Shown here: positions 5,568-47,284 of the stretch, piece by piece
Layout: every line of letters begins with the position of its first letter
Numbering within the stretch: the first letter of the stretch is position 1
Assembly (NCBI GenBank): GCA_002269645.1
Contig: NIVC01000184.1
Span: forward strand, 372,001-436,000
Direction of reading: 5' to 3'
Source: Macrostomum lignano
Taxonomy: Eukaryota
DNA length: 64,000 bases
The notes under the pieces: generated by a model
The model's input: the letters and a program-made list of their open reading frames with translations, nothing else
The model's database searches: none
Told to the model about the DNA's origin: nothing
Made by a program: the position numbers and the translations under genes

Positions 5568-6214
<647 letters not shown>

Positions 6215-9713: not shown

Positions 9714-10760
<1,047 letters not shown>

Positions 10761-13989: not shown

Positions 13990-14129
13990 GTGAGTTGCAA
14001 TTAAACAAAAAGTGACATATTTAAACAAAAATATATTGTGTTGTATTAAAAGCATTTTTAATTTAATAACTTTAAAAATATTTTAGAAGAATCCTAACAA
14101 CTACATAATACCTAGTCGATGATTTAGTT

Positions 14130-26593: not shown

Positions 26594-27566
26594 GAAGAGC
26601 GGTCAAAGAAATTCGCAAAGTTACATGTACCCCTTGAGCACTGGGCAAGAATTTCGACCCCTGCCATAATTACAAAGCGGAGATGCAAAGGCAGAACGCA
26701 CAGACTTCCTCAGAGCGCACAGAGCCGTTTAGCTTGTGAAGCCACTGTGGTTGTCGCCTTTGAGTGTAAATATTTTCTTTGTCTCCAGACGGATCTGTAA
26801 TCATGTAAATCATAAATTATAATGCATCAGCTCGACCTATCAATTTTTACACAAGTATTCATGCGGAACTATAATTTCCGATGGGGCAGGAATGGGATAA
26901 AAATCGAAGTTAATTAGGCTGTAAATATTTATGTAGCTACTGACACATGGCCTAGCTGTGCTGAAAAGGCACAAGAGACCGGCGCCGGCTAAACTTATTA
27001 AAAATGATGCCACATTTTTATTCAAACTTTGTGCCTCAACGCTTCAGCCGCTCTATAGCATATCAGAGTGGTATTTTCTCATCTACGCTCTTATAATAAA
27101 AGTTAACCCTTTGTCTCGAAAGCTAAGCCAACAGGCCTACTGGTATGAAAATATTAACAACTTCGGGTAGATCAGAGGTAAATTTCCCGATTGCTCAAAT
27201 CAAATCTTTCTTCTAGTAGCAAAAATACATGTAGCGAAATCCGTTGAAGCAGCCGTTTACTTCAAGTACTTTAGTGCATTAAATGTACGATTTCTTTACC
27301 AAAACCACTCGGATGCGTTCGAGAACTTAAGAAATAACAAACGACAACAAAAATGTCGACTGCTCCATTGAGTTTTGTATTTCCCAGAAAAGAGAACACA
27401 TTTATTGATGCGAATTTTTGTTAAAAAAATGACGCATATGTAAATAGAAACTATATACAAATTGCTTTGTTGGCTTGAGAATAAATAAATGCTAGATAAA
27501 AAGCCTTGAAAAAAAGTAAACTGTACTTACACATTTAGCAGTGACGTCTAGAAAATTAATGCTCAC

Positions 27567-27666
27567 CTTTATATTAGTTAAATGCGAGTCAACGTAGTTC
27601 TCCGCATTGGCTGCTTCAAGGATGCTCTTCAGTTTAGGAGACACTTGCCAACTTGAGAGGTCGTGC
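27567..27666 (-). CDS. Secreted alpha/beta-hydrolase, N-half exon 6 (HDLSSWQVSPKLKSILEAANAENYVDSHLTNIK)
   Basis: Acceptor TTGCAG|G and donor AAG|GTGAGC; phase 2 in, phase 0 out; not in the ORF track because it is short. Confidence 0.85.
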
Positions 27667-28274
27667 CTGCAACACAGGGTTTTATTTATATAGCCTCTTC
27701 ATGTTGTATGAAATAGAAGTGAAATCGAAATTTAGTTAGTGTGATGATGATGATGATGACACAAGCTCTGCACCTGCCAACAGCACAATTCACCTGAGTT
27801 CTGACCACAGACACTGAATAACTAGATGGGCCACTTAGCACATTTGCGTGTAAACTACTTTCAGTTCAGTAGTAAGTTAAACAGAAGCATTTTAATGTAT
27901 TTTTAAAGCCAAGGCTCACTTATTGACTCTTACCCCCACTTAAACCTCCAACCGCGCCTTTCCACACTACCCCCGCCCCACCCCAATTTTTAATGCCTTT
28001 CTCGGAATTCCAGCCTAAAGCGACCATGTACATTTCAGTGGACTGGCCAATGTACATTATTGCTGAACCAATTAGCAATTTGTTTACGCCTGCAAGCTTG
28101 GGCTTCTAAATCTAAAATTATCAGTCATTTCAGCTGCCTTATTTTTATAAAATAGCTTATGTATTCTTCTTTGCTACTGAAGTGAGAGTAGAAAGCTGTT
28201 TTACTAAGTATACACGCTTGAGTGGCTGGCCTATCTAAGCTATTTTAGTAATCTGTGGCTCTGAATGACCACGA

Positions 28275-28392
28275 ACTTGAGAAGCCGTGCCTGCAACACA
28301 GGGTTTTATTTATATAGCCTCTTCATGTTGTATGAAATAGAAGTGAAATCGAAATTTAGTTTGTGTGATGATGATGATGATGACACAAGCTC
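28275..28392 (-). repeat. Local ~118-bp duplicate of the exon-6 splice acceptor region
   Basis: Near-identical to 27651-27768, including TTGCAG|GCAC and the (ATG)n run. Confidence 0.9.
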
Positions 28393-28807
28393 GCTAGCTC
28401 GCTACTCCATAGCTCCATAGCTCGCTACTAAACTGGGGGCATTTCACAAGTTCTCAAAACTTCACAATCTCTGAAAGTACCAGTAGTACTAGAAAGTTTT
28501 TTTGTTTTTTTTTATTTTTTGCTTTTTTAACTGCACTTTCTGAGTGCGAGTTTTTTTCTGCAGTAATTAACGTACCGAAAAACTTGTGCTTCTGAAATTT
28601 GGAGCTTGTGAAAGCGACCCATTAAACTAGAACGGTACTTATCGAATTCAAAGTTTTAAGAACATCGGAAATGGTTATTAAATCGTTTGATATTCGGAGA
28701 TATACGAGTATTAGGAATTTAGTGCGAAAAAACTGAAAACTTCCTTGAATTTGAAAGTGTCCGGTTAAGGTTCTGTGAACCCGCGTGAAAGCGGCACTGG
28801 AACTTAC

Positions 28808-29342
28808 CTAAAGTACACATTATTATCGCCGTAGTCTTCTTTGCGCAGCCAGCCAGACAGAGAAGCAACCCCAATAGCCCGGCCTGGCCAGTGCGTTGCC
28901 AGCACGAGAGCTCCGTGTCCGCCCATGGAGTGTCCGAGGAACACCAGTCGATCTGGGTCGGCCGCTGGCAATTCGACAGTGGCAACTTCAGCCAAAACTT
29001 CTACAGCTCGCATTGCGGTCAACGCGCCGGTCCCTCCCAGTTGTGCGCCCCGTGACGACTTGGCGCCAACAGCCAAGCGCCGGAAATTCCAAATCTATAA
29101 CCGGCGCTGGCGTCTCTACCAGCCTCTATAAACTTGTGACTATCGGCTTGATCCTCAGGCTTAATACTGGTGCCGTGTAGGCTGACTACGATTGGCAATC
29201 GAACCGCTTGCGATTTCTGACTGCGACCGGTGCCGCCCTGCCACTCTATCGGAGCAATCGCGGCAGCTCGCTGCACCGAGCCGTCGTGATCAACGAATGT
29301 GAACAGCACGCTCTGGTCTGGCCTGCGACAGCGGAGGGTCAC
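28808..29342 (-). CDS. Secreted alpha/beta-hydrolase, N-half exon 5 (nucleophile GHSMG); 1-bp frameshift at ~29027-29030
   Basis: LFTFVDHDGSVQRAA...SLHGT...QADSHK...RHGAHNWEG / GALTAMRA...GHSMGGHG...WLRKEDYGDNN; splice sites and phases fit only if one base is added in CCGG. Confidence 0.85.
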
Positions 29343-29484
29343 CTGCGTGGAAATGGAGAAAAGATTGCGATGAATATTTCTGCTTTTTTACTTCCGGTAC
29401 TTCCCAGCAGTATTCTTACTTGTACTTGGTAGCAGTATTTACTACTTTTACAAGCACCAACTACAAAATGTAAAAACCTACAAT

Positions 29485-29735
29485 GGGGTTGTAGCCTAGT
29501 ACGTGGTTAGAGCGTCGAACTCTTGACCCGCTCGTGGCAACTTTTATCCTTGAGCAAGGCACTTAACTCTGCATTGCTTCAGTTCACCCAGCTGTAAAAT
29601 GGGTGCCAGCATTAGCTGGGGTAACTGAGGGTGCGTGTGGCGATATCCAGTTACTGCATGCACTGAATAGCCGTACGCAGCCTTCAGATGCGCCGCGCAA
29701 TAGCTGCGGCTGAGATTTCGGTTGCACATCCGCCC
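29485..29735 (+). mobile_element. tRNA-derived CORE-like SINE, family A
   Basis: tRNA-like head followed by CCTTGAGCAAGGCACTTAAC...CAGTTCACCCAGCTGTAAAATGGG (resembles MIR/CORE); homologous to 34725-35050 and 52383-52525. Confidence 0.8.
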
Positions 29736-29740
29736 ATTTA

Positions 29741-29905
29741 GCAACTTCCTACCGGTACTTCCCACCAGTAGCAACTTCCTACCGGTACTTCCCACCAGTA
29801 GCTACTTCCTACCGGTACTTCCCACCAGTAACTACTTCCTACCGGTACTTCCCACCAGTAGCTACTTCCTACTGGTACTTCCCACCAGTAGCTACTTCCT
29901 ATCGG
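29741..29905. repeat. 30-bp intronic minisatellite
   Basis: ~5.5 copies of GCAACTTCCTACCGGTACTTCCCACCAGTA. Confidence 0.93.
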
Positions 29906-29946
29906 TAATTCCTACTTTTACGCCGTGCCTGTACCTCCCAACCTAC

Positions 29947-30460
29947 CTGCATTTCTTGAGCCGGTCCGGAATCTTTACAGCTGAGCCGCAGCTTAAGCCG
30001 TAGGCTGTCGCCAGAGGCTTTGCAAGCGGCTCGGCGATCTTTCCCACCAGTACCGCCGCCTGTCAGTTGCAAGTCACCCGCTATAAAGCCCAGCTGACCA
30101 GGCGCGAGATCTTTAGACGGAATGGGCTTAGTTGGTCCCATCCGGCAATCAATCTTATCCCCGCTGCAATCAAGGCGACAGCTGAGAGCTCCGCCAGTTC
30201 GCAGGCTGACAACTGGCACAAAAATTGGCGCCGATGCTCCCGTTAAAAACGCGGCGTCTTGTCCTTCTAGTAGCAGCAAATCGGGCAGAAAATCCGGCGG
30301 CCAAGCTCGAAACTTTGATCCTGTCGCCGCTGCAGAGACGAAACGGCACGACACTGCGGCGGCCTGTTTACCGCGAACTCGTGCCGCTAACAGGTGAACA
30401 CCTCGGCGATTGGTTAGCAATCGCCCGGCAACCGAGGAGACCGCTCGGCCGCGCATGTAG
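29947..30460 (-). CDS. Secreted alpha/beta-hydrolase, N-half exon 4
   Basis: Acceptor ATTTTAG|C, donor CAG|GTAGGT; phase 2 in, phase 0 out; contains PDLL and LAPGQ family motifs. Confidence 0.85.
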
Positions 30461-30544
30461 CTAAAATAGTATTTAAAAAATAATGCTAATCCTGACTCAT
30501 GCTACTAATAGTAGATAAAAAATGATAATGGAGAGAGAACCTAC

Positions 30545-31194
30545 CGATCGGCGGATAGATCGACGACGTCATCAACCGTTACAGCAGCCGGTCCGTCGCA
30601 CACAAGACTCCATTGTAAATCAGTTTTGTGGTCGTCAGCGTCGTTAATCTCCTTAGTCGTGTACACACCGCCAATGAGCCAGCCCTGGAATTCCAGGGCA
30701 GCCGTAGAGCCCAGACTGTTGACCAGTTCACCCCAAGGAACTTCAGGAGCCAGTCGGATCACTCCATTCGAGTCGATGGTATCAACTGGCGTCCACTCCA
30801 TCGTAGAGGAATAGAAAAATTCCGTGAAAAGTTTTCGACGATCAAAATTCTCCGATCGAAGCATCACCGTGGCGACGGCATTTGGCAGGCTGCCAAAAGC
30901 TGACAGCACCGGATCGGCGTCCAGCTCCCCCGTTCCGATGGGAAACCAGCCGAACCGATGCCAGTCCTCAATCGATGGAGCAGCATCACCTGACTCGACA
31001 GTAGATGCAGCCTCTTTGTAGACGAGTTCCGCCAAGTCCCGCTCGTCCAATTCCAGCAGACAATCGGCCAGGGCCAGACGAAGTTTTCGCAGACGATTCA
31101 GCCGCCTGCGACGCACCTTAGTCGACGATGAGGCAGCTTTAGTGGCAGCGACTGTCGCTTGAGTCACTTCGTTGATTAGGCAGACAATGTGTGG
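30545..31194 (-). CDS. Secreted alpha/beta-hydrolase, N-half exon 3
   Basis: Acceptor TTTTAG|CCA, donor CG|GTAGGT; contains WFPIGTGELDADP and FQGW motifs typical of the family N-terminus. Confidence 0.85.
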
Positions 31195-31687
31195 CTAAAA
31201 CAATGCGTAAAATTTAATAAATATAAGCACGATGGCTGTGGCCTGGTGGGCATCTCAGGCCTTTAGCGACATCGTCCAACAACCATCGCCAGGCACGAAT
31301 TCATACACACGCTCACACAGGGTGCACCAACGGTCCTGACTTTCTAATCGTCAGGTATGTACACTCTGTGACTTGGGGGTGGCTCTCATGGGCCCTCAAC
31401 GCCAATTTTCCTGCATAAGCCCCAAATGAATGTGGCCACACAGAATCGAACCACGAGTCGTGGTGCGAAAGTCAAACGTATTTACCTCTGAGCTGCTCTG
31501 CTTCCAATAACGAGCTAATTGACAGACTAATGCATGGAATACAAGACTTGCGCTCTATGCTTGAGATTATCACACAATAATTGCGCCCAAAAACATGCGA
31601 GTCTGTCATGGTTGGGCCAGTGCCCACAAACGCCCCCTGCAAAGCAAACTAATTCAAACATTCAATGCGGGATCAATCTGAACTCAC

Positions 31688-31846
31688 CCGGATGTCCCAG
31701 TCGGAAAGTCGGGCAGCTGCGAAAGCCAACGGCGAAAGCTCAGCGGCACCGGCGCGGTCTTTCCTCTGGCAGGGCGGCCATCCGCGTTGCTGGGCCAAAT
31801 CAGTCAGCTGGCCGGATGATGGGGTAGAGCTGGATGCTGGGACCAG
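31688..31846 (-). CDS. Secreted alpha/beta-hydrolase, N-half exon 2
   Basis: Acceptor TTTCCAG|CTG, donor CGG|GTGAGT; 53 codons, phase 0/0, in frame with exon 3. Confidence 0.7.
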
Positions 31847-31923
31847 CTGGAAATAGAGATAGGTAGATACATGTTACATAGGTAAGAGAACTCACACCCA
31901 ATTCAATATTTGAACCAACTCAC

Positions 31924-31983
31924 CAATAGAGACAGGCATAGGAGCACTGATCTGTCGAAACTTATACGACCGATGTTGCTCTC
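31924..31983 (-). CDS. Secreted alpha/beta-hydrolase, most 5' exon found (start of signal/anchor-like hydrophobic stretch)
   Basis: Acceptor TTTTTTCAG|GAG, donor TTG|GTGAGT; ESNIGRISFDRSVLLCLSLL continues LVPASS in the next exon; start codon not identified. Confidence 0.6.
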
Positions 31984-32072
31984 CTGAAAAAAATTCATTT
32001 CATTTTGTGTCTCAATTAAATTGAGCAGATTCAAGTAGAAACTGGATACAGGAACGGGCTTTCTCAGAAACT

Positions 32073-32842
32073 GAGAATCTGGGAGGCTGGCCCAGCAACT
32101 GAGGATCTGGGAGGCTGGCCCAGCAACTGAGGATCTGGGAGGCTGGCCCAGCAACTGAAGTTCTGGGAGATGGTGGCCCAGCAACTGGGATCTGGGAGGC
32201 TGGCCCAGCAACTGAGGATCTGAGAGGCTGGCCCAGCAACTGAAGTTCTGGGAGATGGTGGCCTAGCAACTGGGATCTGGGAGGCTGGCCTAGCAACTAA
32301 GGATCTGGGAGGCTGGCCCAGCAACTGAGGATCTGGGAGGCTGGCCCAGCAACTGACACTCTGGGAGGCTGGCCCAACAACTGAGGATCTGGGAGGCTGG
32401 CCCAACAACTGAGGATCTGGGAGGCTGGCCCAGCAACTGAGGATCTGGGAGGCTGGCCCAGCAACTGAGGATCTGGGAGGCTGGCCCAACAACTGAGGAT
32501 CTGGGAGGCCGACCCAGCAACTGAGGATCTGGGAGGCTGGCCCAGCAACTGAGGATCTGGGAGGCTGGCCCAGCAACTGAGGATCTGGGAGGCTAGCCCA
32601 GCAACTGACACTCTGGGAGGCTGGCCCAACAACTGACACTCTGGAAGGCTGGCCCAGCAACTGAGAATCTGGGAGGTGAGCCCAGCAACTGAGGATCTGA
32701 GAGGCTGGCCCAGCAACTGACACTCTGGGAGGCTGGCCCAGCAACTGAGAATCTGGGAGGCTGGCCCAGCAACTGAGGATCTGGGAGGCTGGCCCAGCAA
32801 CTGACACTCTGGGAGGCTGGCCCAGCAACTGAGGATCTGGGG
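32073..32842. repeat. 28-bp minisatellite
   Basis: ~27 copies of GAGGATCTGGGAGGCTGGCCCAGCAACT with variants. Confidence 0.97.
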
Positions 32843-33339
32843 ATTTGAGAGAGTGAAAATTCAATTTGAGCATAGCATGACAGCCTAAAAATGAGACCTG
32901 TGCTGATATACTACTTCTAAGTACGGATGAGACGTACACTTCTGTTTTTGTAGATGAATAGCTTGTCATATCTATTACAACCAGCGTCTTAAAACGTATT
33001 TTATGACTATTAGCAAAATGTAATATCTCTGTAAAATACCTTATCAGTTTTAAAAAAAATAGCGTGAGCCAGTCCATTGGACTCAAGAAATAATTCAACA
33101 GAAATGGTAGCCATTCCTTTGTTTATTACATTTTTATTCAACAATTTGCAAGTTAAATCAATACTAAAATTATCATTAGTGACCAAAAAATGAACGTTGT
33201 GTGCGTGGGGCAAGTTAATGTTACTAAATTTTTCCAGAGTTTCTAAGAAATTAACCAACAACTTGTCTTTCTTTATAAAACGATTTGCAAAAAGAGCTTC
33301 CTTAAAGAAAAGTAAGCAAACAAGCAAACATCATAAACA

Positions 33340-34052
33340 GTCACTCAACATCATCATAAACAGTCACTCTTAACATCATAAAAAACAGTCACTCAGCATC
33401 ATCAACAGTCACTCAGCATCATCAACAGTCACTCAGCATCATTAACAGTCACTCAGCATCATCATCAACAGTCACTCAGCAATCATCAACAGTCACTCAG
33501 CATCATCATCAACAGGATCACTCAGCATCATCAACAGTCACTCAGCATCATCAACAGTCACTCAGCATCATCATCAACAGTCACTCAGCATCATCAACAG
33601 TCACTCAGCATCATCATCAACAGTCACTCAGCATCATCAACAGTCACTCAGCATCATCATCAACAGTCACTCAACATCATCATAAACAGTCACTCAACAT
33701 CATCATCAACAGTCACTCAGCATCATCAACAGTCACTCAGCATCATCATCAACAGTCACTCAACATCATCATAAACAGTCACTCAGCATCAACAACAGTC
33801 ACTCAGCATCATCATCAACAGTCACTCAACATCATCATTAACAGTCACTCTTAACATCATAAAAAACAGTAACTCAGCATCATCAACAGTCACTCAGCAT
33901 CATCATCAGTCACTCAGCATCATCATAAACAGTCAATCAACATCATCATAAACAGTCACTCAGCATCATCAACATCATCAAAAACAGTCACTCAGCATCA
34001 TCAACAGTCACTCAGCATCATCAACAGTCACTCAGCATCATCAAACAGTCAC
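33340..34052. repeat. 20/23-bp minisatellite starting at the hydrolase stop codon
   Basis: AACAGTCACTCAGCATCATC(ATC), ~30 copies; the TGA stop lies inside the terminal unit. Confidence 0.95.
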
Positions 34053-34587
34053 TGCACGCAAACGCAGGACGACAACTCGTTTCTAAATTGCCAATGGTTG
34101 TCATAGTAACCAGCGCAAGAAAACCCGCCCGGCCCGGCCGCACTAGCGGTCTCTAATCCGCCTTTGATCACTAGGTAGTCCGGCAGCCAATTGCTGAACG
34201 GCGAGCGCGCCATGGGCGGAATTGTTGGCGAGCTCAGACCAATGACTGCGTCACGTAGGCCGCGACTGTCGATGGCAAGGAACACCAGGGCGACACCGTC
34301 GGGATCCTCCAGACCAGCCGGAGCCAGGCTGACAAACGCGGATCCGGGCGTCGCTGCAACTAACGGAGCCAAAGCGCATTTCCAACGGCGCATTTGAAGC
34401 TTTTCGTCATCGATAAAATCTTGACCAGCCGAAGAATTCCAACCGCCGAGAAAGATGAAGTTTTTAATGCCGAGCGAGTTTAGCTCGCCGCGACGTTGCC
34501 AAGTTAATACGGGCGAGGGAGTGTCCGAGGTTAGCAGAAACTGATTGGCCAAGAATACGGCCAAGCTTTCCGGACAGATGGCCGGAT
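34049..34587 (-). CDS. Secreted alpha/beta-hydrolase, C-half terminal exon
   Basis: Acceptor TTCCACAG|AT (phase 1); LAVFLANQFLLTSD...PTIPPMARSPFSNWLPD...GPGG..CAGYYDNHW...stop. Confidence 0.9.
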
Positions 34588-34724
34588 CTGTGGAAGTAAA
34601 GAAAAGCATTGGTTTCAAACGATTCAGAATTATCAAATTAACATTATCACTATGTGAACATATAACGCTAAGTAAGTGCTGCGTAAAATACAGCATTCAC
34701 GCTGTGAAGTTTTGTTAATGTTGA

Positions 34725-35050
34725 TAATAATAATAATAATAATAATTGATTTCACCTGCTCCAATTAGGACAGATGTGCAACCGACAGCTCAGCCGCAGC
34801 TATTGCGCGGCGCATCTGAAGGCTGCGTACGGCTGTTCAGTCCAAGGACTGCGGGGTCGCCACACACACCCTCAATTACCCTCAGTTACCCCAGCTAAAG
34901 CTGGCACCCATTTTACAGCTGGGTGAACTGAAGCAATGCATAATTAAGTGTCTTACTCAAGGACACAAATTGTTTCAGTGGGATCGGGAATCGAACCCCC
35001 GACCTCCCAGTCGTGAGTCGGACGCTTTAACCACTATAGGCTACAACCCC
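34725..35050 (-). mobile_element. tRNA-derived CORE-like SINE, family A, full length with (ATT)n tail
   Basis: Head GGGGTTGTAGCCTATAGTGG (A box), GGTTCGATTCC (B box), CORE-like block, (AAT)n at 34725-34746. Confidence 0.85.
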
Positions 35051-35539
35051 TGTTAATGTTGAGAATACACACTCAACACACACTAATCTTATGCTTAGAC
35101 TAAACTTATCTATCTTAGCTCGCAGGAATATGGGCACAGTCCTAAAACTGATATATGATAATTAAATGCTATGAGCGCAAAAACAGGGTTTGAGAGTGTG
35201 CTTAGGGAAAGAGGGGCAGACTGATAAACACATAAACAAGGCTGGAGAGAGAAAACGTAAAGTATAGATAAGAACAGAAAAATGAGCCCTGGAAGCGGGG
35301 TTTAGCGACCAACATGCAGGGTGAGGAGATGAGAATTAAACACACGCACTGAGAGAGACAGCCAATCAGAACGCAGATGGACGAACGGAGAGCAAGGAGC
35401 GCAAAAAACAGACAAACACACAGCGGAGACAGGAGCCTCAGTGCAAATGCACGTAATCACGACAGGAGGATTACTTTACAATACTTTACATTACGAGATT
35501 ATTACACACAACTGCAAATTAATCTCAAGTAGTACGCAC

Positions 35540-35906
35540 CAAATAGAATGGCAAAAGGCTGCTCCGCGACCCGGCGCATCGGTCCTAGTTGACTCTCAAG
35601 TCGCACTATTCTATCCCAGTTGTCACCTGACTGAATCTGTTGATCATCGGCATCAAATTTTCGACACTTCCAATCGCCATAACTACTAGAGAAATTTGAC
35701 TGCCAATTTCTGAGGCACTTCACTGTCAAAAATTTTTTTGGAGTCTCTGTTGCCGAATCTGTCAGCAAATCAACGTCTTGACCGTCAACACTTTTAAACT
35801 GATCAATGGAGTAGGCATTTTGGGATTGCAAGTCAAAATTGGCTGTGAACTGCAGAACATTTTCAGTTGTAACCACTGCCATTGCATTGGTATCATCCGA
35901 TTCAAC
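35540..35906 (-). CDS. Secreted alpha/beta-hydrolase, C-half exon 3
   Basis: Acceptor CTTCAG|GTT, donor G|GTGCGT; contains VTTENVLQF and LGPMRRVAEQPFAILFG motifs; phase 0 in, phase 1 out. Confidence 0.85.
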
Positions 35907-36759
35907 CTGAAGTTTAAACAGAAAAAAACAGAATCCGGTATCAATCATGGTTAGGTAAAGTGAGCTGCGTATGTCTATTCTTCATCTGATCTTTACTACA
36001 ATACTGAAAGCTTGTCGTCTGATTATAGTAGGAACAGTCTAAATGGCTTAGCTTGATTAAAGAGACGGTACGTGCTCGTAAATCGAACTGTTGCCATTTA
36101 CTTCTCTTAGTCAAGTTTTACCGCCCCTTAAGTATATAACACAGATACCAGAATAGCCAGAATGCACTCGCAAAAATGCACTCATCTACTCGTTTTCAGT
36201 AGCAAAGTAAGCGTTTTATAGCGTCAGCTACAATCGCCTCTGGCTTTCCACAAGCAACCCCCCCCATTAAATTAACATATTCATCCTGTTCTACCGACTC
36301 CAGACTAACTCAGACTCTAATTTGGGTCCATGAGAATTGCCTCTACGCGACGAACCAAAAAATGCGTCACACCCTTTGCCGACGGCTGGCTGGCACGATT
36401 TCGTGCCAAGTGCATGAGTGTCAGAATTTCTACCCCCGTTCCAGACGGCAGCTAGCTTCACAAGTACACCCGTATGTAGCAAAGCCGCTAAACCAAAAGA
36501 TAATTTGTCTATGGCTGGGGACCAAATGCTATGGCTGCATGTCTTTCATTCATGAGAAAACCTTACAGGGGAATATGGAAAGGGCACTATTTTCGGCCAT
36601 AGATTTTTATTGAAATCACTGTCGTGCTCATAATAGTTCTGCCAAGGACCTGCTTCTGAAATACAGAAACAGTCTTATTATAAAATTGGATATTTTTATC
36701 CTCTGTCTACCCAAAGCACCAAGCATTTCGCTCCTGAGAATCATTACAAGGCGTTAGAC

Positions 36760-37427
36760 TTTGACGGAGACTCGGAGTGAGCTGGTTCACTGCTAATGAT
36801 GAGTCAATTGACGGATCCAAAGTTGAAAATCCCCACAGTGACCAAGAAGAAGGGCAGGATGAGTTAATCGTAGGAGAACAGTGGCATCTAGTTGATGATG
36901 GCGCTGATGCCAGGCCAGCACCTCTGCCTGAGTTCCTCGGAGTACCAGGAGTCAGGCCCGATTTGCAGCTTCCTGAGATCGCCGACGGTAACGAGAGTGA
37001 TTTTATCAAGCTGCACGAGGGCTGAGCAATAAGTTTCAGATTTCAGAATCTGATTTTGTCAGATTTTGTCAGCCGCCTCTCAACTATGCACATCCGGAAA
37101 CTTATTGCTCAGCCCTCGTATTTGACGGACGGGTTGATGGAGAACATCCAGAACTGGACAAACGCAAAGGTTTGGAAGACCTATGAGGATAACTTTGACG
37201 GTGGAACAGTCCCAAATTTTGTGCTGAACTGGAAGGACTGCATGGTTAATGAAGTAAGAAAATTGATCGGAATTGTTTTGCTGATTGGACTGGACAAGAA
37301 GCCTGAAATATCGAGCTATTGGTCGCAAGATCCGTCTTATCACTGTGCATTTCTTGCTGAGCCTTGTTCTCTTCCTAGAGACAGGTTCAAGCAGCTGATT
37401 TCGTCTGCATTGCCCTCCAATGGTTAG
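36760..37427 (+). mobile_element. piggyBac (PGBD4-like) transposase N-terminal fragment, degenerate, intronic
   Basis: PEFLGVPG...DFIKL; TDGLMENIQNWTN; WKDCMVNEVRKLIGIVLLIGLDKKPEISSYWSQDP...LPRDRFKQL; frameshifted, TIRs not found. Confidence 0.8.
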
Positions 37428-38044
37428 TAAGTCTTAATAGAGATTTACCCGATCAAAACGTTTCGATGGTAACTGTGCACCAAATGCATATTTTTTGCGG
37501 GCTTTCATTTCTTTATACATGCAGGGGTACATCGGTGAGCTATTGATTCATGCATGTCATGCCGCTTGGTCCACTAAATCTCTTTATTAAGACTTTTTAA
37601 GCATAGGAGGGCAATTCGCTCGCGGGCAATTCTCGTGCCCGCTTGTGCCTGTAATTGACCTATTTCCTTACTGCTCTCTCATTGGCTGAGCTGGATTGGG
37701 CCTGCCCCCTAGCCTAGGTTCGCCCGCCCGTCTTGCGTTCACAAGTGTACATCAAGTTAAATTCTTGTTGATTCTTAACCCCATATGCTCCCGAGGCTAC
37801 AGACCCCGAGGAAGGAAAGAAAATTTTAGCAGCCACATTAAATTGAAGTGACACTGCGCAGACAAACTACTTAATAATGAGTAGACGCTCTACTTTTATT
37901 GCGAAAAGTGACACATCTAGATATATTCTAGTATCTGTGGTACAAATTCCTATGACGTCTTTTACGTCACTGGACTCGTTTAACTGGCTGAAGACCACGT
38001 ATTTCGTTGTCTGTTGTGTGGTACATACTGGTATCAAGTATTGA

Positions 38045-38230
38045 GAGGAGAGAATAGCTCAAGGTTTAACGTGTCTGTCCTCGCGCCAAAGACCTTGGGT
38101 TCGATACCGCACGCTTCGATACCGCCGGAGTGGACATGGCTGCTAGCCTTCTTCATGGTTGGGGTTAACTGTTGCCTCGACTTGTGGCAGTTCTTAAAGT
38201 CGTGCAACTAAGCAACTAGCTCATATACCA
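38045..38230 (+). mobile_element. tRNA-like SINE head (third family) in intron
   Basis: TAGCTCAAGG A-box and GGTTCGATACC B-box motifs, no complete cloverleaf. Confidence 0.4.
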
Positions 38231-38267
38231 GGTATATAATACGCTAAATTTAATACGCTAAACTTAC

Positions 38268-38535
38268 CTTTAAACTGCTAAAAAGCGACGGATATATTTG
38301 CCTATCAATTCGGAATCCGTGCAACGACCCGGTGAAAGACGGATTATAAGTTGTCAAGGTGAACGGGTCCTTAGCAGCAGCAATAGAAGAGTACTTATCA
38401 GATGCACTTTTCCCAGAGCAGTCTGAAGCGCCTCGCTTGCAATATCCTTGGTCAGAGTTCTTAGACAAAGAGATTGCTTCCCGCAGAAATTTTTGCACCT
38501 GTTCATCGTTCATCACTCCGCCATCGTTTGGTCGC
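38268..38535 (-). CDS. Secreted alpha/beta-hydrolase, C-half exon 2
   Basis: Acceptor CTAATCAG|G, donor AAG|GTAAGT; RPNDGGVMND...FTLTTYNPSFTGSLHGFRI; phase 2 in, phase 0 out. Confidence 0.9.
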
Positions 38536-38694
38536 CTGATTAGATAGAAAAATTCAAATAATTCGTGAATTTTTAATTTAAAGTATGTGCGGCTTCTTCG
38601 GTGGCAGCCATCTATTAGCAAATTAATCCCACAGCACAGAGGCCAACACCCTGTGTGCAACACCCTATCATCACCCGCCACTTTTTAGAGAATC

Positions 38695-39085
38695 GAGGGC
38701 AGCAAAAATTCTGGGCGCAACCCCTCCCCCCCACACTTCACTCGTCAGGCAATTGAGAGCAATAAAATTCTGGGTGCAACCCCTCACTCTCCACTCCCCA
38801 GGCAATCGAGAGCAATAAAATCTGGGTGCAACCCCTCACCCTCCACTCGCCAGGCATCGAGAGCAATAAAATTCTGGGTGCAACCCCTCACTCTCCACTC
38901 CCCGGGCAATCGAGAGCAATAAAATCTGGGTGCAACCCCTCACTCTCCACTCCCCAGGCAATTGGAAGCAATAAACTTCTGAGCGCACCCTTAACCTTTA
39001 TTCCCTAGGCAAGTTGGGCAATAAAATTCTGGGCGCAACCCCTCACCCTGCACCCCCCACGCAATTTGGAACAATGAAATTCTGA
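38695..39085. repeat. ~53-bp intronic minisatellite
   Basis: ~7 copies of GAGAGCAATAAAATTCTGGGTGCAACCCCTCACTCTCCACTCCCCAGGCAATC. Confidence 0.9.
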
Positions 39086-39152
39086 GTGAGTGCAAGCTAA
39101 ATATTTCCTTGTGTCAATTAAGGAGTGCAGATAGATAAACAAATATTATTAC

Positions 39153-39304
39153 CGAGTATCCCACCACCAATGACCTTGACCTGACACCTCGTCAAAGGTG
39201 ACGCGGGTGGCATTGATGGAAGCGAGCTGGCGGGCCAGTCGACGCAGATAATATGGCGGCACCACTCGATCATTGCTGCCGACTCGAAGGAAAATAGGTA
39301 GCCC
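39153..39304 (-). CDS. Secreted alpha/beta-hydrolase, C-half exon 1 (putative catalytic Asp and His)
   Basis: Acceptor CTTCGCAG|GGG (phase 0), donor CG|GTAATA; GLPIFLRVGSNDRVVPP...GQGHWWWDT. Confidence 0.9.
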
Positions 39305-42300
39305 CTGCGAAGGTAGAATTTTTATTAGTAAACTCGATAACGATATTGTTTTAATATTAAAGTACAAGTGGATAGATGATTTGCAGCTTCTGACAGAGTT
39401 ATCACATTGATTTGATAAGCAAAACTTTACATTAAAATCAATGAGCAGACTTCACAAGCTTATATAGAAAACATGCAACAATATTGGGTTTTGAGTTGAA
39501 TTACACAATAGACTCATAGCCGTAGGCCAATATGGAAACAGTTTGAAAAATAAAAAAGTCGATAGCCAGATTGGCCAAGTCAGGTAAGTGTTGTGCATGT
39601 ACAATATAAATATTTACACAACAAAATAAAGGTAAGTTTAGCTCAGTCAAAGCAATCCTAACACCAGTTGCTCAAGGCAGCCTTGACACATTGCTTTGGC
39701 AACATAGCAAAGCTGAAATAAAATTAGCTGAAAAGTTATTTTGAATTTTGATCATGACAAAATTTAAGTCTTAACAAAGCATAAAACAAATTGCTAAAAC
39801 TGTTTTTGACCAAGAAATGTTTTTCCTATGTTCAATATTTAACAAACTGTGTTAAATAAGCAAGGTACCTTACCACAAAACTATTGTAAGTCCATTCTAA
39901 AAAGGGTTATTTTTTGCTATTTTAGCTCTAATATATGGAACTTAGCTTAAGAACCTAGAAAAAGTTAGTTAAGAGTAATAAATATTGCAAAATATTAGTA
40001 TCCAATTATAGATAAATCTGATGAGTTTGATATTAAAGTGGTATTTAAAAAGATTTTATTGATAATTGACCATTTAAAGTAGTAGATTATAAAATGTCTT
40101 GATAGGTTTCTGATTGAAAATTTAGGTCTGAGGATTGTTTACTTTAAGTATAATTAGCATTTAAGCTTTCAAACAGAAAATATAATTTAGTATACCATAA
40201 ACATAGACATAGGATCAGGTAATAGGCATTTAATTTTTATTTGTACTAGTGCTATGCCTTTATAATAGTATACTCGAATGTTCTTTCAATGTAATAACTG
40301 TATCTTTCTTAGAAACTGAATCTACGCGAAACGCTAAATAATAGTTTGTTTTAATGCGCGAAATAAATTGGGGAAATAATTTTTTGTTATAAATGTATCG
40401 GGAATTCAGGGGTATATATAGGAGCGGTTTTGCGACAAATATACTCCAACTGTCTTTTACCCGTGAGCAAATAATTGCGAACAGAATAAGCAGTTCAATC
40501 TAAACCATTTCAAAGTCTTTGAGCTAAATAGCAACTTATTCATTTGCAAAACCTGTGAAACGATTCTAAGAAATTTGCTAAGAGAAGGGAATTGGGACTA
40601 ATTCTTGGAGATATACTAAGAGAGGCGCCATGACCCTCTAGTCTCGGTGAACGCCCGATTAGGACTATACACTAATACATATACCAGTACTAGACCGCTC
40701 AGGCCATAAGCTACCAGAACGCTACCAGAAAGCTACCCAGAAATATTTAAATGAAATTCTAAGAAATAGTTAGGGAGTAGAAACAAGTATAATCAGGATA
40801 ACTTTAGTTGGCAAACAGGAAGAATCACCCCTGTAACAACTTGGTGGCAATAGTGAGATAGTTGGAGGACAGAAGTAAGCCCTGCGACAACTTTGGTTAC
40901 AGCGGTAGGATTTTGTACCGTACGGGAATACCCCTACGACACATTAGATATTAACAAAATTCAGGCCTTATTTATATTAACACCATTCAAAAAATTATTT
41001 GAACAAATAACACCTAGGCCTAATTGTGCAGTGGCACTAAATATTTTAAGCTTTAAATTTCTAGATGCTGTTTTTTATGTTTAAATGTATATATACATAT
41101 TATTCTGTGCTATTGTATAAGACACAAAAAATTATGCATTAGCATGGGCACCATATATAATGTTTAATTTCTAGATGGCTGCTTTTGGATTTAGGTTTAG
41201 ATGTATACTTATTATCCTGCTCTATTGTACAAGACGCTTAAAATTATGGTAAAATTACAAAAAAACTAGTTTAACTACCTTACACTTACACCTTTGCTAG
41301 GCCTACAGCTGTACAGTACAGGTACTACACTTACACTACAGGCTACAATAAAAAATAGACTCAGAGAGTTAGTTCAATAGGTCTATATGTATATTGAAAT
41401 ACAATACAATTTTACATTTTTAATTTTGTATCTAATAAGTAAACGCTACAAGCCTTGGTTAAATAGTTCAAACTCATAGCTAAGCTTTGTCACCTAAAGC
41501 TTGTCACGTGAGCACCAGCAATTTTATTAAAGGGGGGCTAAAATTGCAAGTTAAACTGGTATCTGTAGCAAGATTCGTGGCTTTTTAAGAAGCAATCATA
41601 ACTTAAATTTTTCTGCCCTTGGTTTTTAGGACATGTTAGATCAAAATTAGCTAATTTCTTTCCTTACTAACTGAGTTAAGTTATATGCAAGAAATACTTT
41701 GTTATTTCTCACCTACGCGTGACTTCAAATCCATAAAACTAGACCTGCATGCATGTCGATCTTAATTATCGCTTTTAGCTGTCGATCGATCTACCATGAA
41801 TTGATTTAATGATCAAAATGAAGTAGAAAGACGCTGCACTCGGTTTTCCTATAATTATAAATGAGCTGCAGGCCAGTAAGGAAGATATATATTGTCGTAT
41901 CGCTATCTAGAGCACAGTTAGAGTAGTACGCAGCAACTCTTGAGAGATCGGATTCTTCCAGCTCCAGCACAGATTTTTCTCGACCGAATTTTTCGATGGC
42001 GAAATTCCATTCAGTGCTATTCGTTCTCTTGATCATACTAATACAACAATACGACAAATAAGCGTTCCTTACCATCAGCTTCAGCTCATTTAAAAAATGA
42101 ATTAATAGAGAGTAAAGAAAAGAAATAGACAGTCCATTATTCAAACTGAAATTCTTACATGCATCGTTATCAGAATCAACCAGACAAATCGTTTCCTCAA
42201 CAACAAAGAATTTATCCAATATGCACTCTCACTTCTTATCGATCCAGCATGGAGCCACATCGACGACTGCATAAATGTACATGTACACACATTCGGTCTT

Positions 42301-42727
42301 TAATAATAACTTGATTCGCCGGGGCGTAGCCTGAAGGGTCAATGAGGCCGCCCCCAGGCTGGGATAAAATTATAGGCCCCTTGTAGGTTCGGCGCCCTTC
42401 TTGATGGGGTTTCGGCCTTTTCGGCCCTTTTCGGGAAGCCTTCGGGCCTTAGCTGTCTCAGAAATAAATCAGTTAGAGTCCTAACCCCCCCACTCCTGTC
42501 AGATGGTCAGCCCCATGGTAGCTTGATCTTGTGGCGAGCAGTCTAGGTCCTATAGCTAAGAGAAGGAAAGCGAGAGACAAACAGGGAGAATTTTGAAGGT
42601 AGAGATCAGCTAATCTGCAGATTAACTAACCCGCTGCCACCAGCCCGTGCGTCCTGGCTCACCAAACCGGAACTTTCGAAATCGGGCTTCTGACTAGAGG
42701 GGACTTAACACTTACCTGCCAACTAGT

Positions 42728-43884: not shown

Positions 43885-43885
43885 T

Positions 43886-43899
43886 TGGCGACGAGGATG
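43886..43899 (+). promoter_or_regulatory. Primer-binding site, tRNA-Ser(GCU)-type, overlapping the gag ATG
   Basis: TGGCGACGAGGATG is complementary to the 3' end ...CATCCTCGTCGCCA of tRNA-Ser(GCU). Confidence 0.85.
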
Positions 43900-47080: not shown

Positions 47081-47284
47081 AAATTTATTCGTATATTGTA
47101 TTGTGAAACGTATTTTTAATCGCGTGACATTTTGGCGGTTGAATTTATCGATCGTGCAACAATTTACTGTTAAATATCAAATATAAGCGCGGGTTGCCCT
47201 AAGTGGAGCTCGCACTTTTTTCCGGCAAAAAGTCTTACCTGCCACGTACTCGTGTTTCCTGTGTTAGTCTGTTGAGACACCACA
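47080..47284 (+). repeat. 3' LTR, 5'-truncated by deletion
   Basis: Directly abuts the truncated integrase; no PPT or first ~95 bp of the LTR. Confidence 0.88.

What the first reader, a model, noticed from the sequence alone, without database searches (positions are those of the whole stretch)
27567..39304. Circularly permuted hydrolase gene: C-terminal exons lie upstream of N-terminal exons and the catalytic triad is split
Seen: ten minus-strand exons with canonical GT-AG sites reconstruct one ~1100-aa ARB_06907-like/peptidase S9-like protein, and I found each exon only once in the 64 kb. In transcription order the C-half (39304-34049, ending in the stop) comes first. The N-half (31983-27567) follows about 2 kb later. 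The last N-half exon ends ...HLTNIK (phase 0, donor GTGAGC) and the first C-half exon starts GLPIFLRVG (phase 0), which is the expected family junction. The GHSMG serine is in the N-half; the putative Asp (GSND) and His (GHWW) are in the C-half. Inference, with alternatives: (a) junction of a head-to-tail tandem duplication whose other halves lie outside the window, which needs a >25 kb intron containing other genes on each side; (b) misassembly near the 8 kb satellite; (c) a genuinely permuted locus restored at RNA level. For (c), a read-through transcript back-spliced 27567->39304 gives a circle holding the full ORF, which spliced-leader trans-splicing and polyadenylation in the 32-34 kb gap could linearise; cis-independent trans-splicing is another route.
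Basis: partly seen in the sequence, partly recalled or inferred. Interest (0 to 1): 0.85.

Follow-up and report, generated by a model that had tools for sequence, protein, structure and literature searches.

The report
Split, order-swapped flatworm hydrolase gene
In the flatworm Macrostomum lignano, a conserved esterase-type gene has been broken inside one intron and its back half now lies in front of its front half, so ordinary RNA processing gives two separate messages rather than one enzyme; whether the animal re-joins them at the RNA level is untested but easy to test.

Summary
The window is M. lignano Mlig_3_7 contig NIVC01000184.1.

- **Exons.** Ten minus-strand GT-AG exons encode a 678-aa N-half (31998..27567) and a 441-aa C-half (39304..34049). 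Each occurs once, and the C-half lies upstream.
- **Ancestral form.** Lingula and Elysia carry the same gene in normal order, with a short phase-0 intron exactly at the NIK|GLP junction.
- **Catalytic triad.** It is split: Ser is in the N-half, Asp and His are in exon C1.
- **Frameshift.** It is probably a consensus error.
- **Not a misassembly.** A second, 1-2% diverged copy on contig NIVC01000749.1 shows the same order: C end, spacer, N-half, satellite, then the same downstream DNA.
- **No tandem partner.** None lies between -5.9 kb and 64 kb, and no annotated M. lignano protein spans the junction.
- **Public annotation.** It treats the halves as two genes sharing one transcription-unit name. 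The sequence shows poly(A) signals after the C-half, an SL-type acceptor at 31983, and a poly(A) signal 160 nt past the orphan donor.

Best reading: a genuine gene fission with order reversal, expressed as a two-gene SL-resolved unit. RNA-level re-joining has no sequence support, but only RNA data can exclude it.

The parts
39153..39304 (-). Exon C1. First exon of the C-half, with an orphan 3' splice site (cag|GGG, phase 0). Encodes GLPIFLRVGSND...GQGHWWWDTR, with the catalytic Asp (39271-39269) and His (39172-39170).
   Evidence: The orthologous 152-nt exon in Lingula has the same phases.
38268..38535 (-). Exon C2. The annotated CDS of Mlig010965g1 (P0035) starts at the internal ATG at 38513.
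35540..35906 (-). Exon C3
34049..34587 (-). Exon C4, with the family's natural C-terminus and TGA stop (34051-34049).
31999..34048 (-). Spacer between the C-half stop and the N-half start. It holds a 20-23-bp tandem array (33329-34053), a 487-bp unique segment with two AATAAA signals (33138-33133 and 33127-33122), and a 28-bp tandem array (32065-32841). About 570 nt is non-repeat.
   Evidence: The spacer is conserved in the second copy.
31984..31989 (-). TTTCAG acceptor matching the M. lignano SL trans-splice motif YTNCAG. The exon then starts at 31983. In the two other copies the last three bases read ATG instead of CAG.
   Evidence: motif and SL sequence from PMC8629364. Model P0041 starts exactly at the equivalent base.
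31924..31998 (-). Exon E1 (genomic ATG at 31998; signal-peptide-like N-terminus).
31688..31846 (-). Exon E2
30545..31194 (-). Exon E3
29947..30460 (-). Exon E4
28808..29342 (-). Exon E5, with the nucleophile elbow GHSMGG (Ser codon 28929-28927). A 1-nt deletion at 29029 shifts the frame in this copy only.
27567..27666 (-). Exon E6. Last N-half exon, ending ...HLTNIK in phase 0.
27401..27566 (-). Orphan 5' splice site GTGAGC (27566-27561). A read-through tail VSINFLDVTAKCVSTVYFFSRLFI* follows (stop at 27494-27492), then AATAAA at 27406-27401. This is the likely 3' end of the N-half mRNA.
18378..26593 (.). 35-bp satellite (about 236 copies), about 1 kb downstream of the orphan donor. It is present at the same place in both arms of contig 749, there 1.3 kb and 5.4 kb long.
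37056..37427 (+). piggyBac-type transposase fragment inside the C2-C3 intron. This is the intron where the palindrome of the related contig has its centre.

Best explanation
This is a real genomic rearrangement of an ancestrally collinear, secreted esterase-D-like alpha/beta-hydrolase gene of about 1,120 aa.

**What happened.** The gene was broken inside its conserved phase-0 intron between exons E6 and C1. The 3' half (C1-C4) now lies about 2 kb upstream of the 5' half (E1-E6) on the same strand.

**How it is expressed.** The two halves behave as a two-gene, operon-like transcription unit of the kind common in M. lignano.
- The upstream C-half message ends at the poly(A) signals near 33.13 kb.
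- The downstream N-half message starts at the SL-type acceptor at 31983. The flatworm SL ends in AUG, which would be in frame there. The genomic ATG at 31998 is the alternative start.
- The N-half message runs through the now partnerless donor at 27567, adds 24 codons, and ends after the AATAAA at 27406.

**Consequence.** Ordinary processing gives an N-half protein carrying the Ser but lacking the last two core strands, the Asp and the His. It also gives a separate C-half product. It does not give a complete enzyme.

**Likely origin.** A head-to-tail duplication (N-C-N-C), from which only the inner C-N part survived or was copied. An equivalent three-break swap would give the same result.

**Shown versus inferred.** Shown: the arrangement, its presence in two diverged copies, the collinear orthologues, the split triad, the processing signals, and the two-gene annotation. 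Inferred: use of the SL site, the separate proteins, and the origin.
For: **Identity and arrangement**
- The window is 100% identical to NIVC01000184.1.

**Ancestral state**
- Lingula (L005) and Elysia (L006) have N then C on one strand, with introns of about 250 bp and about 740 bp at the same codon boundary. The Lingula exon C1 has identical phases.
- Homologues P0003, P0008, P0012 and P0028 run straight across the junction.

**Real, not an artefact**
- Contig NIVC01000749.1 carries the same order (C end, spacer, N-half, satellite, then the same downstream DNA) in two arms. One arm differs by 1-2% in substitutions throughout.
- Gene models from the older ML2 assembly are also N-only (P0042) and C-only starting exactly at GLPIF (P0045, P0046).

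**Two messages**
- NCBI genes Mlig010965g1 (C-half) and g2 (N-half) share a name prefix. So do Mlig011572g1 (C end) and g2 (N-half) on the other contig.
- Prefixes are given to transcription units clustered at 95% identity, and the units are cut into genes at SL and poly(A) evidence (PMC5730564). The halves share no sequence, so a shared prefix implies one unit covering both.
- AATAAA lies at 33138 and 33127. The acceptor TTTCAG|GAG matches the SL motif, and the SL ends in ATG.
- Model P0041 begins at the first base after that site. All three N-half models read through the donor into ...NIKVSINF...*.
- The repeat-adjusted spacer of about 570 nt is below the 1-kb operon threshold used in PMC8629364.

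**Break inside the catalytic domain:**
Against: - **Both halves look constrained, which is awkward if they are dead fragments.** Between the two copies the N-half has 13 synonymous and 15 non-synonymous differences (pN/pS 0.39, binomial p=0.016). Exon C4 has 0 differences in 538 nt against 7/946 in the adjacent intron. The numbers are small, and overall exon divergence (1.38%) is close to intron divergence (1.52%).
- **The orphan sites are still good.** The orphan donor and acceptor both keep consensus sequence and compatible phase.
- **The C-half has no obvious way to start.** It has no ATG of its own before the Asp/His exon, and no plausible new signal-peptide exon lies in the 4.4 kb upstream.
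- **No RNA data were seen.** SL use and poly(A) sites are inferred from motifs and from model boundaries. Standard genome-guided assembly cannot report a non-collinear junction, so its absence from the annotation is weak evidence.
- **Model starts disagree.** Two of the three N-half models start 15 nt downstream of the acceptor. The acceptor AG is present only in the window copy.
Confidence: 0.6

Rival explanations
1. RNA-level repair. The partnerless donor at 27567 is spliced to the partnerless acceptor at 39304, restoring a full-length hydrolase mRNA. This could happen between two pre-mRNA molecules (genic trans-splicing, as in C. elegans eri-6/7) or by back-splicing of a C-to-N read-through transcript.
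For: - The phases are compatible (0/0), and both sites keep consensus sequence.
- The halves appear to be co-transcribed in one unit.
- There is modest purifying selection on both halves after the rearrangement.
- The catalytic residues and the HWWWDT/NDGG motifs are intact.
- The organism has an active trans-splicing machinery.
- eri-6/7 is a precedent for repair of a rearranged gene.
Against: - No inverted or complementary repeat links the 1 kb after the donor, or the 6 kb beyond the satellite, to the 4.5 kb before the acceptor. The best match is 13 nt, at chance level. eri-6/7 depends on about 930-bp repeats.
- A poly(A) signal lies 160 nt past the donor, and two more lie between the halves.
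- All RNA-based N-half models retain the sequence after the donor.
- The annotated C-half CDS starts at 38513. That implies an in-frame stop upstream, so exon C1 is not spliced in that model.
- The ML2 models use an alternative donor that deletes the His motif.
- An orphan acceptor in this animal is expected to take the abundant SL instead.
- The prior is low.
Confidence: 0.1
2. Junction of a head-to-tail tandem duplication. The other halves lie outside the window and are reached by giant introns. Alternatively, a normal collinear copy exists elsewhere and this locus is only a partial segmental copy.
For: - Tandem duplication is the simplest way to place a C-half directly before an N-half.
- The genome is rich in recent duplications: 312 Mb duplicated, per PMC5730564.
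- The assembly around this locus is visibly imperfect, with a mosaic of copies and a palindromic contig.
Against: - No second C-half lies in window 1-27566 or in the 5.86 kb beyond it (L004). No second N-half lies in 39305-64000.
- The introns would have to exceed 33 kb and 24.7 kb, against a mean of 1.1-1.4 kb. They would also contain a same-strand annotated gene and retroelements.
- On the 709-kb contig only one N-half protein and one C-half protein are annotated. No M. lignano protein in the 5.8-billion-protein collection spans the junction.
- The N-half models end by read-through rather than splicing onward.
Confidence: 0.12
3. Assembly artefact. The C-to-N adjacency, or the exit from the N-half into the satellite, is a false join.
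For: - This is a PacBio-era assembly.
- The window is a mosaic of two sequence versions, switching between 27993 and 27740.
- It has a 1-nt consensus-type deletion exactly at a site that differs between the versions.
- Contig 749 is an odd palindrome.
- An 8-kb satellite lies next to the break.
Against: - The adjacency recurs in three contig regions representing two sequence versions that differ by substitutions all along the junction region.
- The DNA after the satellite is the same in all three regions, although the satellite lengths differ.
- The annotated transcription units cross the C-to-N spacer at two loci.
- The independent ML2 models are split the same way.
- Only contig 184 supports the link between exons C1-C2 and C3-C4, apart from ML2 model P0045.
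Confidence: 0.04
4. Two-subunit enzyme. The halves are translated separately (the C-half from an SL-supplied AUG at the phase-0 acceptor of C1) and reassemble non-covalently into an active hydrolase.
For: - The SL ends in AUG. Spliced at 39304, it would be in frame and give M-GLPIFLRVG....
- The ML2 models begin exactly at that base.
- There is constraint on both halves.
Against: - The break cuts through the central sheet of the alpha/beta fold, between strand 6 and strand 7.
- The N-half has a signal-peptide-like start and the family is secreted, whereas the C-half would have no signal peptide. The two would therefore be made in different compartments.
- The C1 acceptor TCGCAG does not fit the YTNCAG SL motif.
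- The Mlig_3_7 CDS starts downstream of C1.
Confidence: 0.05

Closest known systems
C. elegans eri-6/7 (rearranged helicase gene repaired by genic trans-splicing; PMC11414722, Fischer & Ruvkun 2008 as cited there)
   Same: - An ancestrally single gene was broken in an intron by a structural rearrangement.
- The break left a 5' part ending in a donor and a 3' part starting with an acceptor.
- Transposon remnants lie in the locus.
- The host has an SL trans-splicing machinery.
   Different: - In eri-6/7 the 5' part is inverted, not moved behind the 3' part.
- About 930-bp repeats tether the two pre-mRNAs, and the fused mRNA has been demonstrated.
- Here no tethering repeats exist and no fused mRNA is known.
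SL-resolved operons (multi-gene transcription units) of Macrostomum lignano (PMC5730564, PMC8629364)
   Same: - The genes lie on the same strand.
- The repeat-adjusted spacer is under 1 kb.
- Poly(A) signals follow the upstream gene.
- A YTNCAG acceptor precedes the downstream gene.
- Both genes carry one transcription-unit name.
   Different: The two cistrons are the two halves of one ancestral gene, in reversed order. I know of no described operon of that kind.
Circular permutation of proteins by tandem duplication and end loss (the 'permutation by duplication' model; from general knowledge)
   Same: A head-to-tail duplicate places the C-terminal part directly before an N-terminal part. Loss of the outer parts leaves C before N.
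   Different: In true permutants the two parts fuse into one reading frame and fold as one chain. Here a stop codon, 2 kb of spacer, poly(A) signals and a new start separate them.
Esterase D / S-formylglutathione hydrolase-like alpha/beta hydrolases (Pfam PF00756 Esterase, PF00326 Peptidase_S9; database name 'uncharacterized secreted protein ARB_06907-like')
   Same: - GHSMGG nucleophile elbow.
- Ser-Asp-His order.
- The fold matches 3ls2, 3fcx and 3i6y (Foldseek E 1e-12 to 1e-13).
   Different: - The protein is much larger, about 1,120 aa.
- About 450 aa at the N-terminus and about 380 aa at the C-terminus match no Pfam family.
- The substrate is unknown.
Exon-scrambled or back-spliced circular RNAs
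   Same: A downstream donor joined to an upstream acceptor on one transcript would give exactly the NIK|GLP junction.
   Different: - Back-splicing is usually helped by inverted repeats in the flanking introns. None lies near these sites.
- The only inverted pair (1597-2236 and 48230-48875) lies 25 kb and 9 kb away.
- The circle would have to escape three poly(A) signals.

Membership tests
alpha/beta-hydrolase, esterase-D-like (Pfam clan of PF00756 / PF00326) | Nucleophile elbow G-x-S-x-G after strand 5 | tested here: met
   GHSMGG is in exon E5. It aligns to the elbow of LC-Est1C and of S-formylglutathione hydrolases.
alpha/beta-hydrolase, esterase-D-like (Pfam clan of PF00756 / PF00326) | Acid after strand 7 and His after strand 8, in the order Ser-Asp-His | tested here: met
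   - GSND and GQGH are in exon C1.
- Peptidase_S9 profile positions 57-209 of 213 match residues 590-749 of the re-joined protein.
- The model places them after strands 216-221 and 247-252.
- The pairwise alignment of this part to 3wyd is weak on its own.
alpha/beta-hydrolase, esterase-D-like (Pfam clan of PF00756 / PF00326) | Overall fold | tested here: met
   AlphaFold2 pLDDT 83.6, pTM 0.86. Foldseek top hits are 3ls2, 3fcx and 3i6y, probability 1.00, TM 0.55-0.62. This holds only for the re-joined sequence. Neither half contains the whole domain.
Circularly permuted protein / gene | One continuous reading frame encoding the C-terminal part followed by the N-terminal part | tested here: not met
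   TGA at 34051-34049 is followed by 2,065 nt of spacer with tandem repeats and AATAAA signals. The N-half has its own start.
SL-resolved operon of M. lignano | Adjacent same-strand genes with a repeat-adjusted distance under 1 kb | tested here: met
   2,065 nt minus 720 nt and 777 nt of tandem arrays leaves about 570 nt. The criterion is from PMC8629364.
SL-resolved operon of M. lignano | Downstream gene receives the spliced leader | tested here: inconclusive
   - TTTCAG|GAG fits the YTNCAG motif, and model P0041 starts at that base.
- No SL-containing reads could be examined.
- Models P0040 and P0001 start 15 nt further on.
- The AG is replaced by TG in the two other copies.
SL-resolved operon of M. 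lignano | One primary transcript covers both genes | tested here: inconclusive
   This is inferred from the shared name prefixes Mlig010965 g1/g2 and Mlig011572 g1/g2 and the naming rule in PMC5730564. No read coverage was seen.
Genic trans-splicing of a rearranged gene (eri-6/7 type) | 5' part ending in an unpaired donor, and 3' part starting with an unpaired acceptor, in compatible phase | tested here: met
Genic trans-splicing of a rearranged gene (eri-6/7 type) | Repeats that let the two pre-mRNAs base-pair next to the splice sites | tested here: not met
   blastn with word size 9, 39305-43800 against 26594-27566 and against 12000-18377, gave only chance matches of at most 18 nt.
Genic trans-splicing of a rearranged gene (eri-6/7 type) | A mature mRNA carrying the re-joined junction | not testable with these tools
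   No M. lignano RNA reads or transcript assemblies are available here. No protein in the searched collections spans the junction.
Tandem-duplication junction | A second N-half upstream and a second C-half downstream on the same strand | tested here: not met
   None was found from 5.86 kb below the window start to 64000. DNA beyond that range could not be read.

The most novel reading that the evidence does not exclude
M. lignano restores a full-length, catalytically complete hydrolase mRNA from a genomically order-swapped gene. It would do so by splicing the orphan donor at 27567 to the orphan acceptor at 39304, either between two transcripts or by back-splicing within the C-to-N transcription unit. 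It would be the first known animal gene whose exon order is un-permuted at the RNA level.
Probability: 0.1. Interest if true: 0.85.

Novelty: new variant of a known kind. Interest (0 to 1): 0.42.

Why it matters
**If the ordinary reading holds.** This is a clean, datable example of gene fission with order reversal. The break lies in a conserved intron. Both fragments are still transcribed from one SL-resolved unit and still appear mildly constrained. It would illustrate how SL trans-splicing, with a leader that supplies its own AUG, can keep fragments of broken genes expressed.

**If the halves are re-joined.** It would be a second, mechanistically different case of RNA-level repair of a rearranged gene, after eri-6/7. 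It would occur in a transgenesis-capable flatworm.

**Testability.** Either outcome can be decided in an afternoon with public RNA-seq data.

**For annotators.** Three points matter:
- Mlig010965g1 and g2 are halves of one ancestral gene.
- The frameshift at 29029 is probably a consensus error.
- Contig NIVC01000749.1 contains a suspicious palindrome.

Tried and rejected
1. **Extra, diverged copies of any exon.** I searched the window and the 5.86 kb beyond its start with tblastn at E<=5 and with distant homologues as queries. Nothing turned up. A 66-aa hit at 41823-41659 (E=2.4) is noise.
2. **Complementary or inverted repeats next to the orphan splice sites.** None found.
3. **A new ATG plus signal-peptide exon that could splice in phase 0 into C1.** Within 4.4 kb upstream only one poor candidate exists, at 42260-42159.
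4. **Walking further along the contig.** Only one window-encoded product (4140-4904) is on record, which added 5.86 kb. The ORF at 54613-55359 is not on record.
5. **Gene names Mlig010965, Mlig011572 and Mlig025679 in papers and supplements.** No occurrences.
6. **Literature on non-collinear transcripts or circular RNA in Macrostomum.** None found.
7. **Treating contigs 184 and 749 as three independent copies.** Rejected. Substitution patterns show only two sequence versions, A and B. The window is A from 35854 to 27993 and B from 27740 downward.
8. **Taking the frameshift as evidence of pseudogenisation.** Rejected as unsafe. It lies exactly at a G/C difference between A and B, in a contig that mixes both.
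9. **My first guess that the paralogues at 54.6 kb and 57.3 kb are C-type lectins.** Pfam does not support it.

Full report
**Source of the window.** The N-half ORFs hit 'hypothetical protein BOX15_Mlig010965g3, partial [Macrostomum lignano]' at 100% identity. The locus fetched for the C-half protein P0035 (NIVC01000184.1, 396049-420513, reversed) is 100% identical to window 48513..24049. The window is therefore Mlig_3_7 (GCA_002269645.1) contig NIVC01000184.1, positions 372001-436000. M. lignano is a free-living flatworm with spliced-leader (SL) trans-splicing and many multi-gene transcription units (PMC5730564 and PMC8629364).

**Check of the observation.** tblastn with the M. lignano models and with collinear homologues maps the N-terminal 678 residues to 31998..27567 and the C-terminal 441 residues to 39304..34049. 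Both are on the minus strand, so the C-half is transcribed first.
- Exact matching of the protein models to the three frames gives ten exons, all with AG and GT boundaries: E1-E6 and C1-C4 (coordinates in 'parts').
- E6 ends ...HLTNIK|GTGAGC in phase 0. C1 begins CAG|GGG CTA CCT (GLP...) in phase 0.
- A permissive tblastn (E<=5) finds no further copy of any exon in the window.

- The genomic ATG is at 31998. Position 31983 is the first base after a TTTCAG acceptor.
- The window copy lacks one base at 29029, so its frame closes at ...HNWEGPAR*, and the NCBI model P0040 (563 aa) stops there. At that position one related copy has G and the other has C. The window contig is a mosaic of those two versions. 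A consensus error is therefore more likely than a real frameshift.

**The catalytic triad is split.**
- GHSMGG (Ser codon 28929-28927) lies in E5. GSND (Asp 39271-39269) and GQGH (His 39172-39170) lie in C1.
- In the re-joined protein, Pfam Peptidase_S9 passes its threshold over residues 590-749, across the junction at 678|679. Pfam Esterase covers 555-690.
- An AlphaFold2 model of the re-joined domain, built with 20 homologues, has pLDDT 83.6 and pTM 0.86. The junction falls between helix 204-211 and strand 216-221. That strand is followed by the Asp, a helix, strand 247-252 and the His.
- Foldseek places the model with esterase D / S-formylglutathione hydrolases (3ls2, 3fcx, 3i6y; E about 1e-13).
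- The break therefore runs through the core sheet, and neither half holds a complete domain.

**The ancestral state is collinear.**
- Homologues from Elysia (P0003) and several metagenomic proteins (P0008, P0012, P0028) read straight across the junction.
- The genomic loci of Lingula (L005) and Elysia (L006) have N-half exons followed by C-half exons on one strand. Their introns at the same codon boundary are about 250 bp and about 740 bp.
- In Lingula the sequence is ...AATCTCAAG|gtgtga, and exon C1 has the same start and end phases as in M. lignano.
- The M. lignano order is therefore derived, and the break lies in a conserved intron.

**Not an assembly artefact.** P0001 and P0041 come from a second contig, NIVC01000749.1 (L001, L003).
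- That contig is a palindrome: N-half, spacer and C end, inverted, then C part, spacer and N-half. Its centre is in the C2-C3 intron.
- Counting substitutions shows only two sequence versions. Version A is the right arm of contig 749 and window 35854..27993. Version B is the left arm and window 27740 downward.
- A and B differ by 1-2% in the N-half and its introns, and by 1.4% in the unique part of the spacer.
- Both versions have C4, the same spacer, the N-half, the 35-bp satellite, and then the same DNA as window 18444..12036. The satellite lengths are 8.2, 1.3 and 5.4 kb.
- Gene models from the older ML2 assembly are also N-only (P0042) or C-only, beginning exactly at GLPIF (P0045, three identical entries; P0046).
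- One caveat: only contig 184, and model P0045, link exons C1-C2 to C3-C4.

**Tandem-duplication test.**
- No second C-half lies in window 1-27566 or in the 5.86 kb beyond the window start (L004). No second N-half lies in 39305-64000.
- The required introns would exceed 33 kb and 24.7 kb, against a mean of 1.1-1.4 kb. They would contain a same-strand annotated gene (4140-4904), an LTR retroelement, a LINE and two paralogous Cys-rich genes.
- The protein clusters contain only three N-half and three C-half NCBI proteins, none spanning the junction. Only one of each is on the 709-kb contig.
- All three RNA-based N-half models read through the donor into VSINFLDVTAKCVSTVYFFSRLFI* instead of splicing to a downstream exon.

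**Expression anatomy.**
- The NCBI names pair the halves. Mlig010965g1 (C-half) and g2 (N-half) are on contig 184. Mlig011572g1 (C end) and g2 (N-half) are on the left arm of contig 749.
- According to PMC5730564, prefixes are shared by transcription units clustered at 95% identity. The TBONE pipeline cuts units into genes at mapped SL and poly(A) signals.
- The halves have no sequence in common. A shared prefix therefore implies a unit that covers both. This is an inference.
- After the C-half stop comes a 20-23-bp tandem array, then a 487-bp unique segment with AATAAA at 33138 and 33127, then a 28-bp array, then TTTCAG|GAG at 31984/31983.
- The published SL acceptor motif is YTNCAG. The SL (CGGTCTCTTACTGCGAAGACTCAATTTATTGCATG) ends in ATG, which would be in frame at 31983. 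Flatworm SL AUGs are known to start translation (Cheng et al. 2006, as cited in PMC9851317).
- Model P0041 begins exactly at the equivalent base.
- The repeat-adjusted spacer is about 570 nt, below the 1-kb operon criterion.
- Downstream of the orphan donor, the stop is at 27494-27492 and AATAAA is at 27406.
- The annotated C-half CDS (P0035, flagged complete) starts at the ATG at 38513 in exon C2. A model containing C1 spliced to C2 would have had an open 441-codon frame. The annotated transcript therefore probably lacks that splice (inference).
- The ML2 models include C1 but use an alternative GT donor at 39185/39184, which removes SGQGHWWWDTR.

**Tests of RNA-level re-joining.**
- blastn (word size 9) was run between the 4.5 kb upstream of the C1 acceptor and the 1 kb downstream of the E6 donor, and also against the 6 kb beyond the satellite. 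Only chance matches appeared. This contrasts with the roughly 930-bp repeats that drive eri-6/7 trans-splicing.
- The only sizeable inverted pair in the window that brackets the locus is 1597-2236 and 48230-48875, which lie 25 kb and 9 kb away.
- No convincing upstream ATG plus signal-peptide exon for the C-half exists.
- None of this excludes trans-splicing. Genome-guided assemblers cannot report such junctions, and I had no reads.

**Selection.**
- Between A and B the N-half CDS (2,034 nt, open in both) has 13 synonymous and 15 non-synonymous differences: pS 0.025, pN 0.0099, ratio 0.39, binomial p=0.016.
- Exon C4 has 0/538 differences against 7/946 in the neighbouring intron.
- Overall exon divergence (1.38%) is close to intron divergence (1.52%). 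The constraint is therefore modest and the numbers are small.
- Even so, this argues that the halves were not simply dead throughout the time since A and B separated. It is the main point in favour of some retained function.

**Conclusion.**
- The best-supported reading (confidence about 0.6) is a genuine fission with order reversal of a conserved secreted hydrolase gene. It most likely derives from the inner C-N part of a head-to-tail duplicate, and is now expressed as a two-gene SL-resolved unit whose ordinary products cannot form the complete enzyme.
- The rivals are listed with probabilities of 0.12 (tandem partners or a collinear copy elsewhere), 0.10 (RNA-level repair), 0.05 (a two-subunit enzyme) and 0.04 (artefact).
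- The gene models are public, but I found no report that they are permuted halves of one gene.
- The locus is a good, cheap test case for RNA-level repair in a trans-splicing animal. On present evidence it is an unusual rearrangement, not a new mechanism.

Noticed in passing
window 29029 (exon E5): A 1-nt deletion relative to both related copies (G in one, C in the other) shifts the frame of the N-half in this contig only. It lies at a variant site in a contig that mixes the two versions, so it looks like a consensus error. The NCBI model P0040 is truncated by it.
   Followed up: yes
window 27993-27740, and the whole stretch 36434-14767: The window is a mosaic. It matches the right arm of contig NIVC01000749.1 at every variant site from 35854 to 27993. 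It matches the left arm from 27740 downward (99.9% over 18472-14767). This is either a haplotype or paralogue switch in the assembly, or a real recombinant.
   Followed up: yes
L001 5325-5455 / L003 (NIVC01000749.1, about 94.6-106.2 kb): Contig 749 holds a palindrome of the locus with 1-2% diverged arms. The centre lies in the C2-C3 intron (window equivalents 35726 and 36434), close to a piggyBac-type transposase fragment. Both arms lack exons C1 and C2. Whether it is real or an assembly join is not resolved.
   Followed up: partly
window 31986-31984; L001 and L003 equivalents: The acceptor CAG of the window (TTTTTTTCAG|GAGAGC) reads TTTTTTTATG|GAGAGC and TTTTTTCATG|GAGAGC in the other two copies. 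There a genomic ATG sits exactly where the SL's terminal AUG would be added, and the AG needed for trans-splicing is absent.
   Followed up: partly
window 18378-26593: An 8.2-kb satellite of a 35-bp unit (CTGCAGATTCAAGAACTGAGGGTAGAGTAGAGAGG, about 236 copies, strong GC and AT skew). The same array is 1.3 kb and 5.4 kb long in the two arms of contig 749.
   Followed up: partly
window 37056-37427 (+): A piggyBac-type transposase fragment (Pfam DDE_Tnp_1_7, E 2.7e-9) lies inside the 2.4-kb C2-C3 intron.
   Followed up: partly
window 29547-29730 and 34773-34963: An inverted repeat of about 190 bp (85% identity). One copy is in the E4-E5 intron of the N-half and the other in the C3-C4 intron of the C-half. 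It is probably a short dispersed element. It lies inside, not outside, the segment a back-splice would circularise.
   Followed up: no
window 1597-3384 and 47734-48875: A dispersed element of about 0.65-1.1 kb is present as an inverted pair (1597-2236 vs 48875-48230, 89.5%) and as direct copies (2238-2668 vs 47734-48166, and 2741-3384 vs 48214-48875). It lies far outside both orphan splice sites.
   Followed up: no
window 43722-47284 (+); 60932-63324 (-): A truncated LTR retroelement (RT, RNase H, integrase zinc domain; 163-bp terminal repeats 97.5% identical) and a LINE-type reverse transcriptase.
   Followed up: partly
window 54608-55328 and 57284-58007 (-): Two tandem, 90% identical ORFs for Cys-rich proteins with a signal-peptide-like start. 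They have no Pfam match, and the 248-aa ORF is not on record as an annotated product.
   Followed up: partly
L005 14160-14590 (Lingula anatina LFEI02000088.1): The Lingula RefSeq models are split at the same phase-0 intron. The N-half model reads through the donor (NLK|gtgtga gives V*). A separate 403-aa model starts at an internal ATG in the exon equivalent to C1, although the gene is collinear there. This intron may be poorly spliced or poorly supported in more than one species.
   Followed up: partly
window 39186-39153 (exon C1, 3' end): The UniProt/ML2 models P0045 and P0046 use an in-frame alternative GT donor at 39185/39184. It removes SGQGHWWWDTR, including the catalytic His. I cannot tell whether this reflects transcripts or only a predictor's choice.
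   Followed up: no
window 5568-6204, 9715-10763, 11358-11977, 14130-14586, 38727-39088, 51326-51489: Numerous micro- and minisatellites: (AGAC)n, (CAGA)n, and 21-bp, 70-bp, 52-bp and 12-bp units. The 52-bp array lies in the C1-C2 intron. The 12-bp array encodes a Lys/Ala-rich ORF.
   Followed up: no
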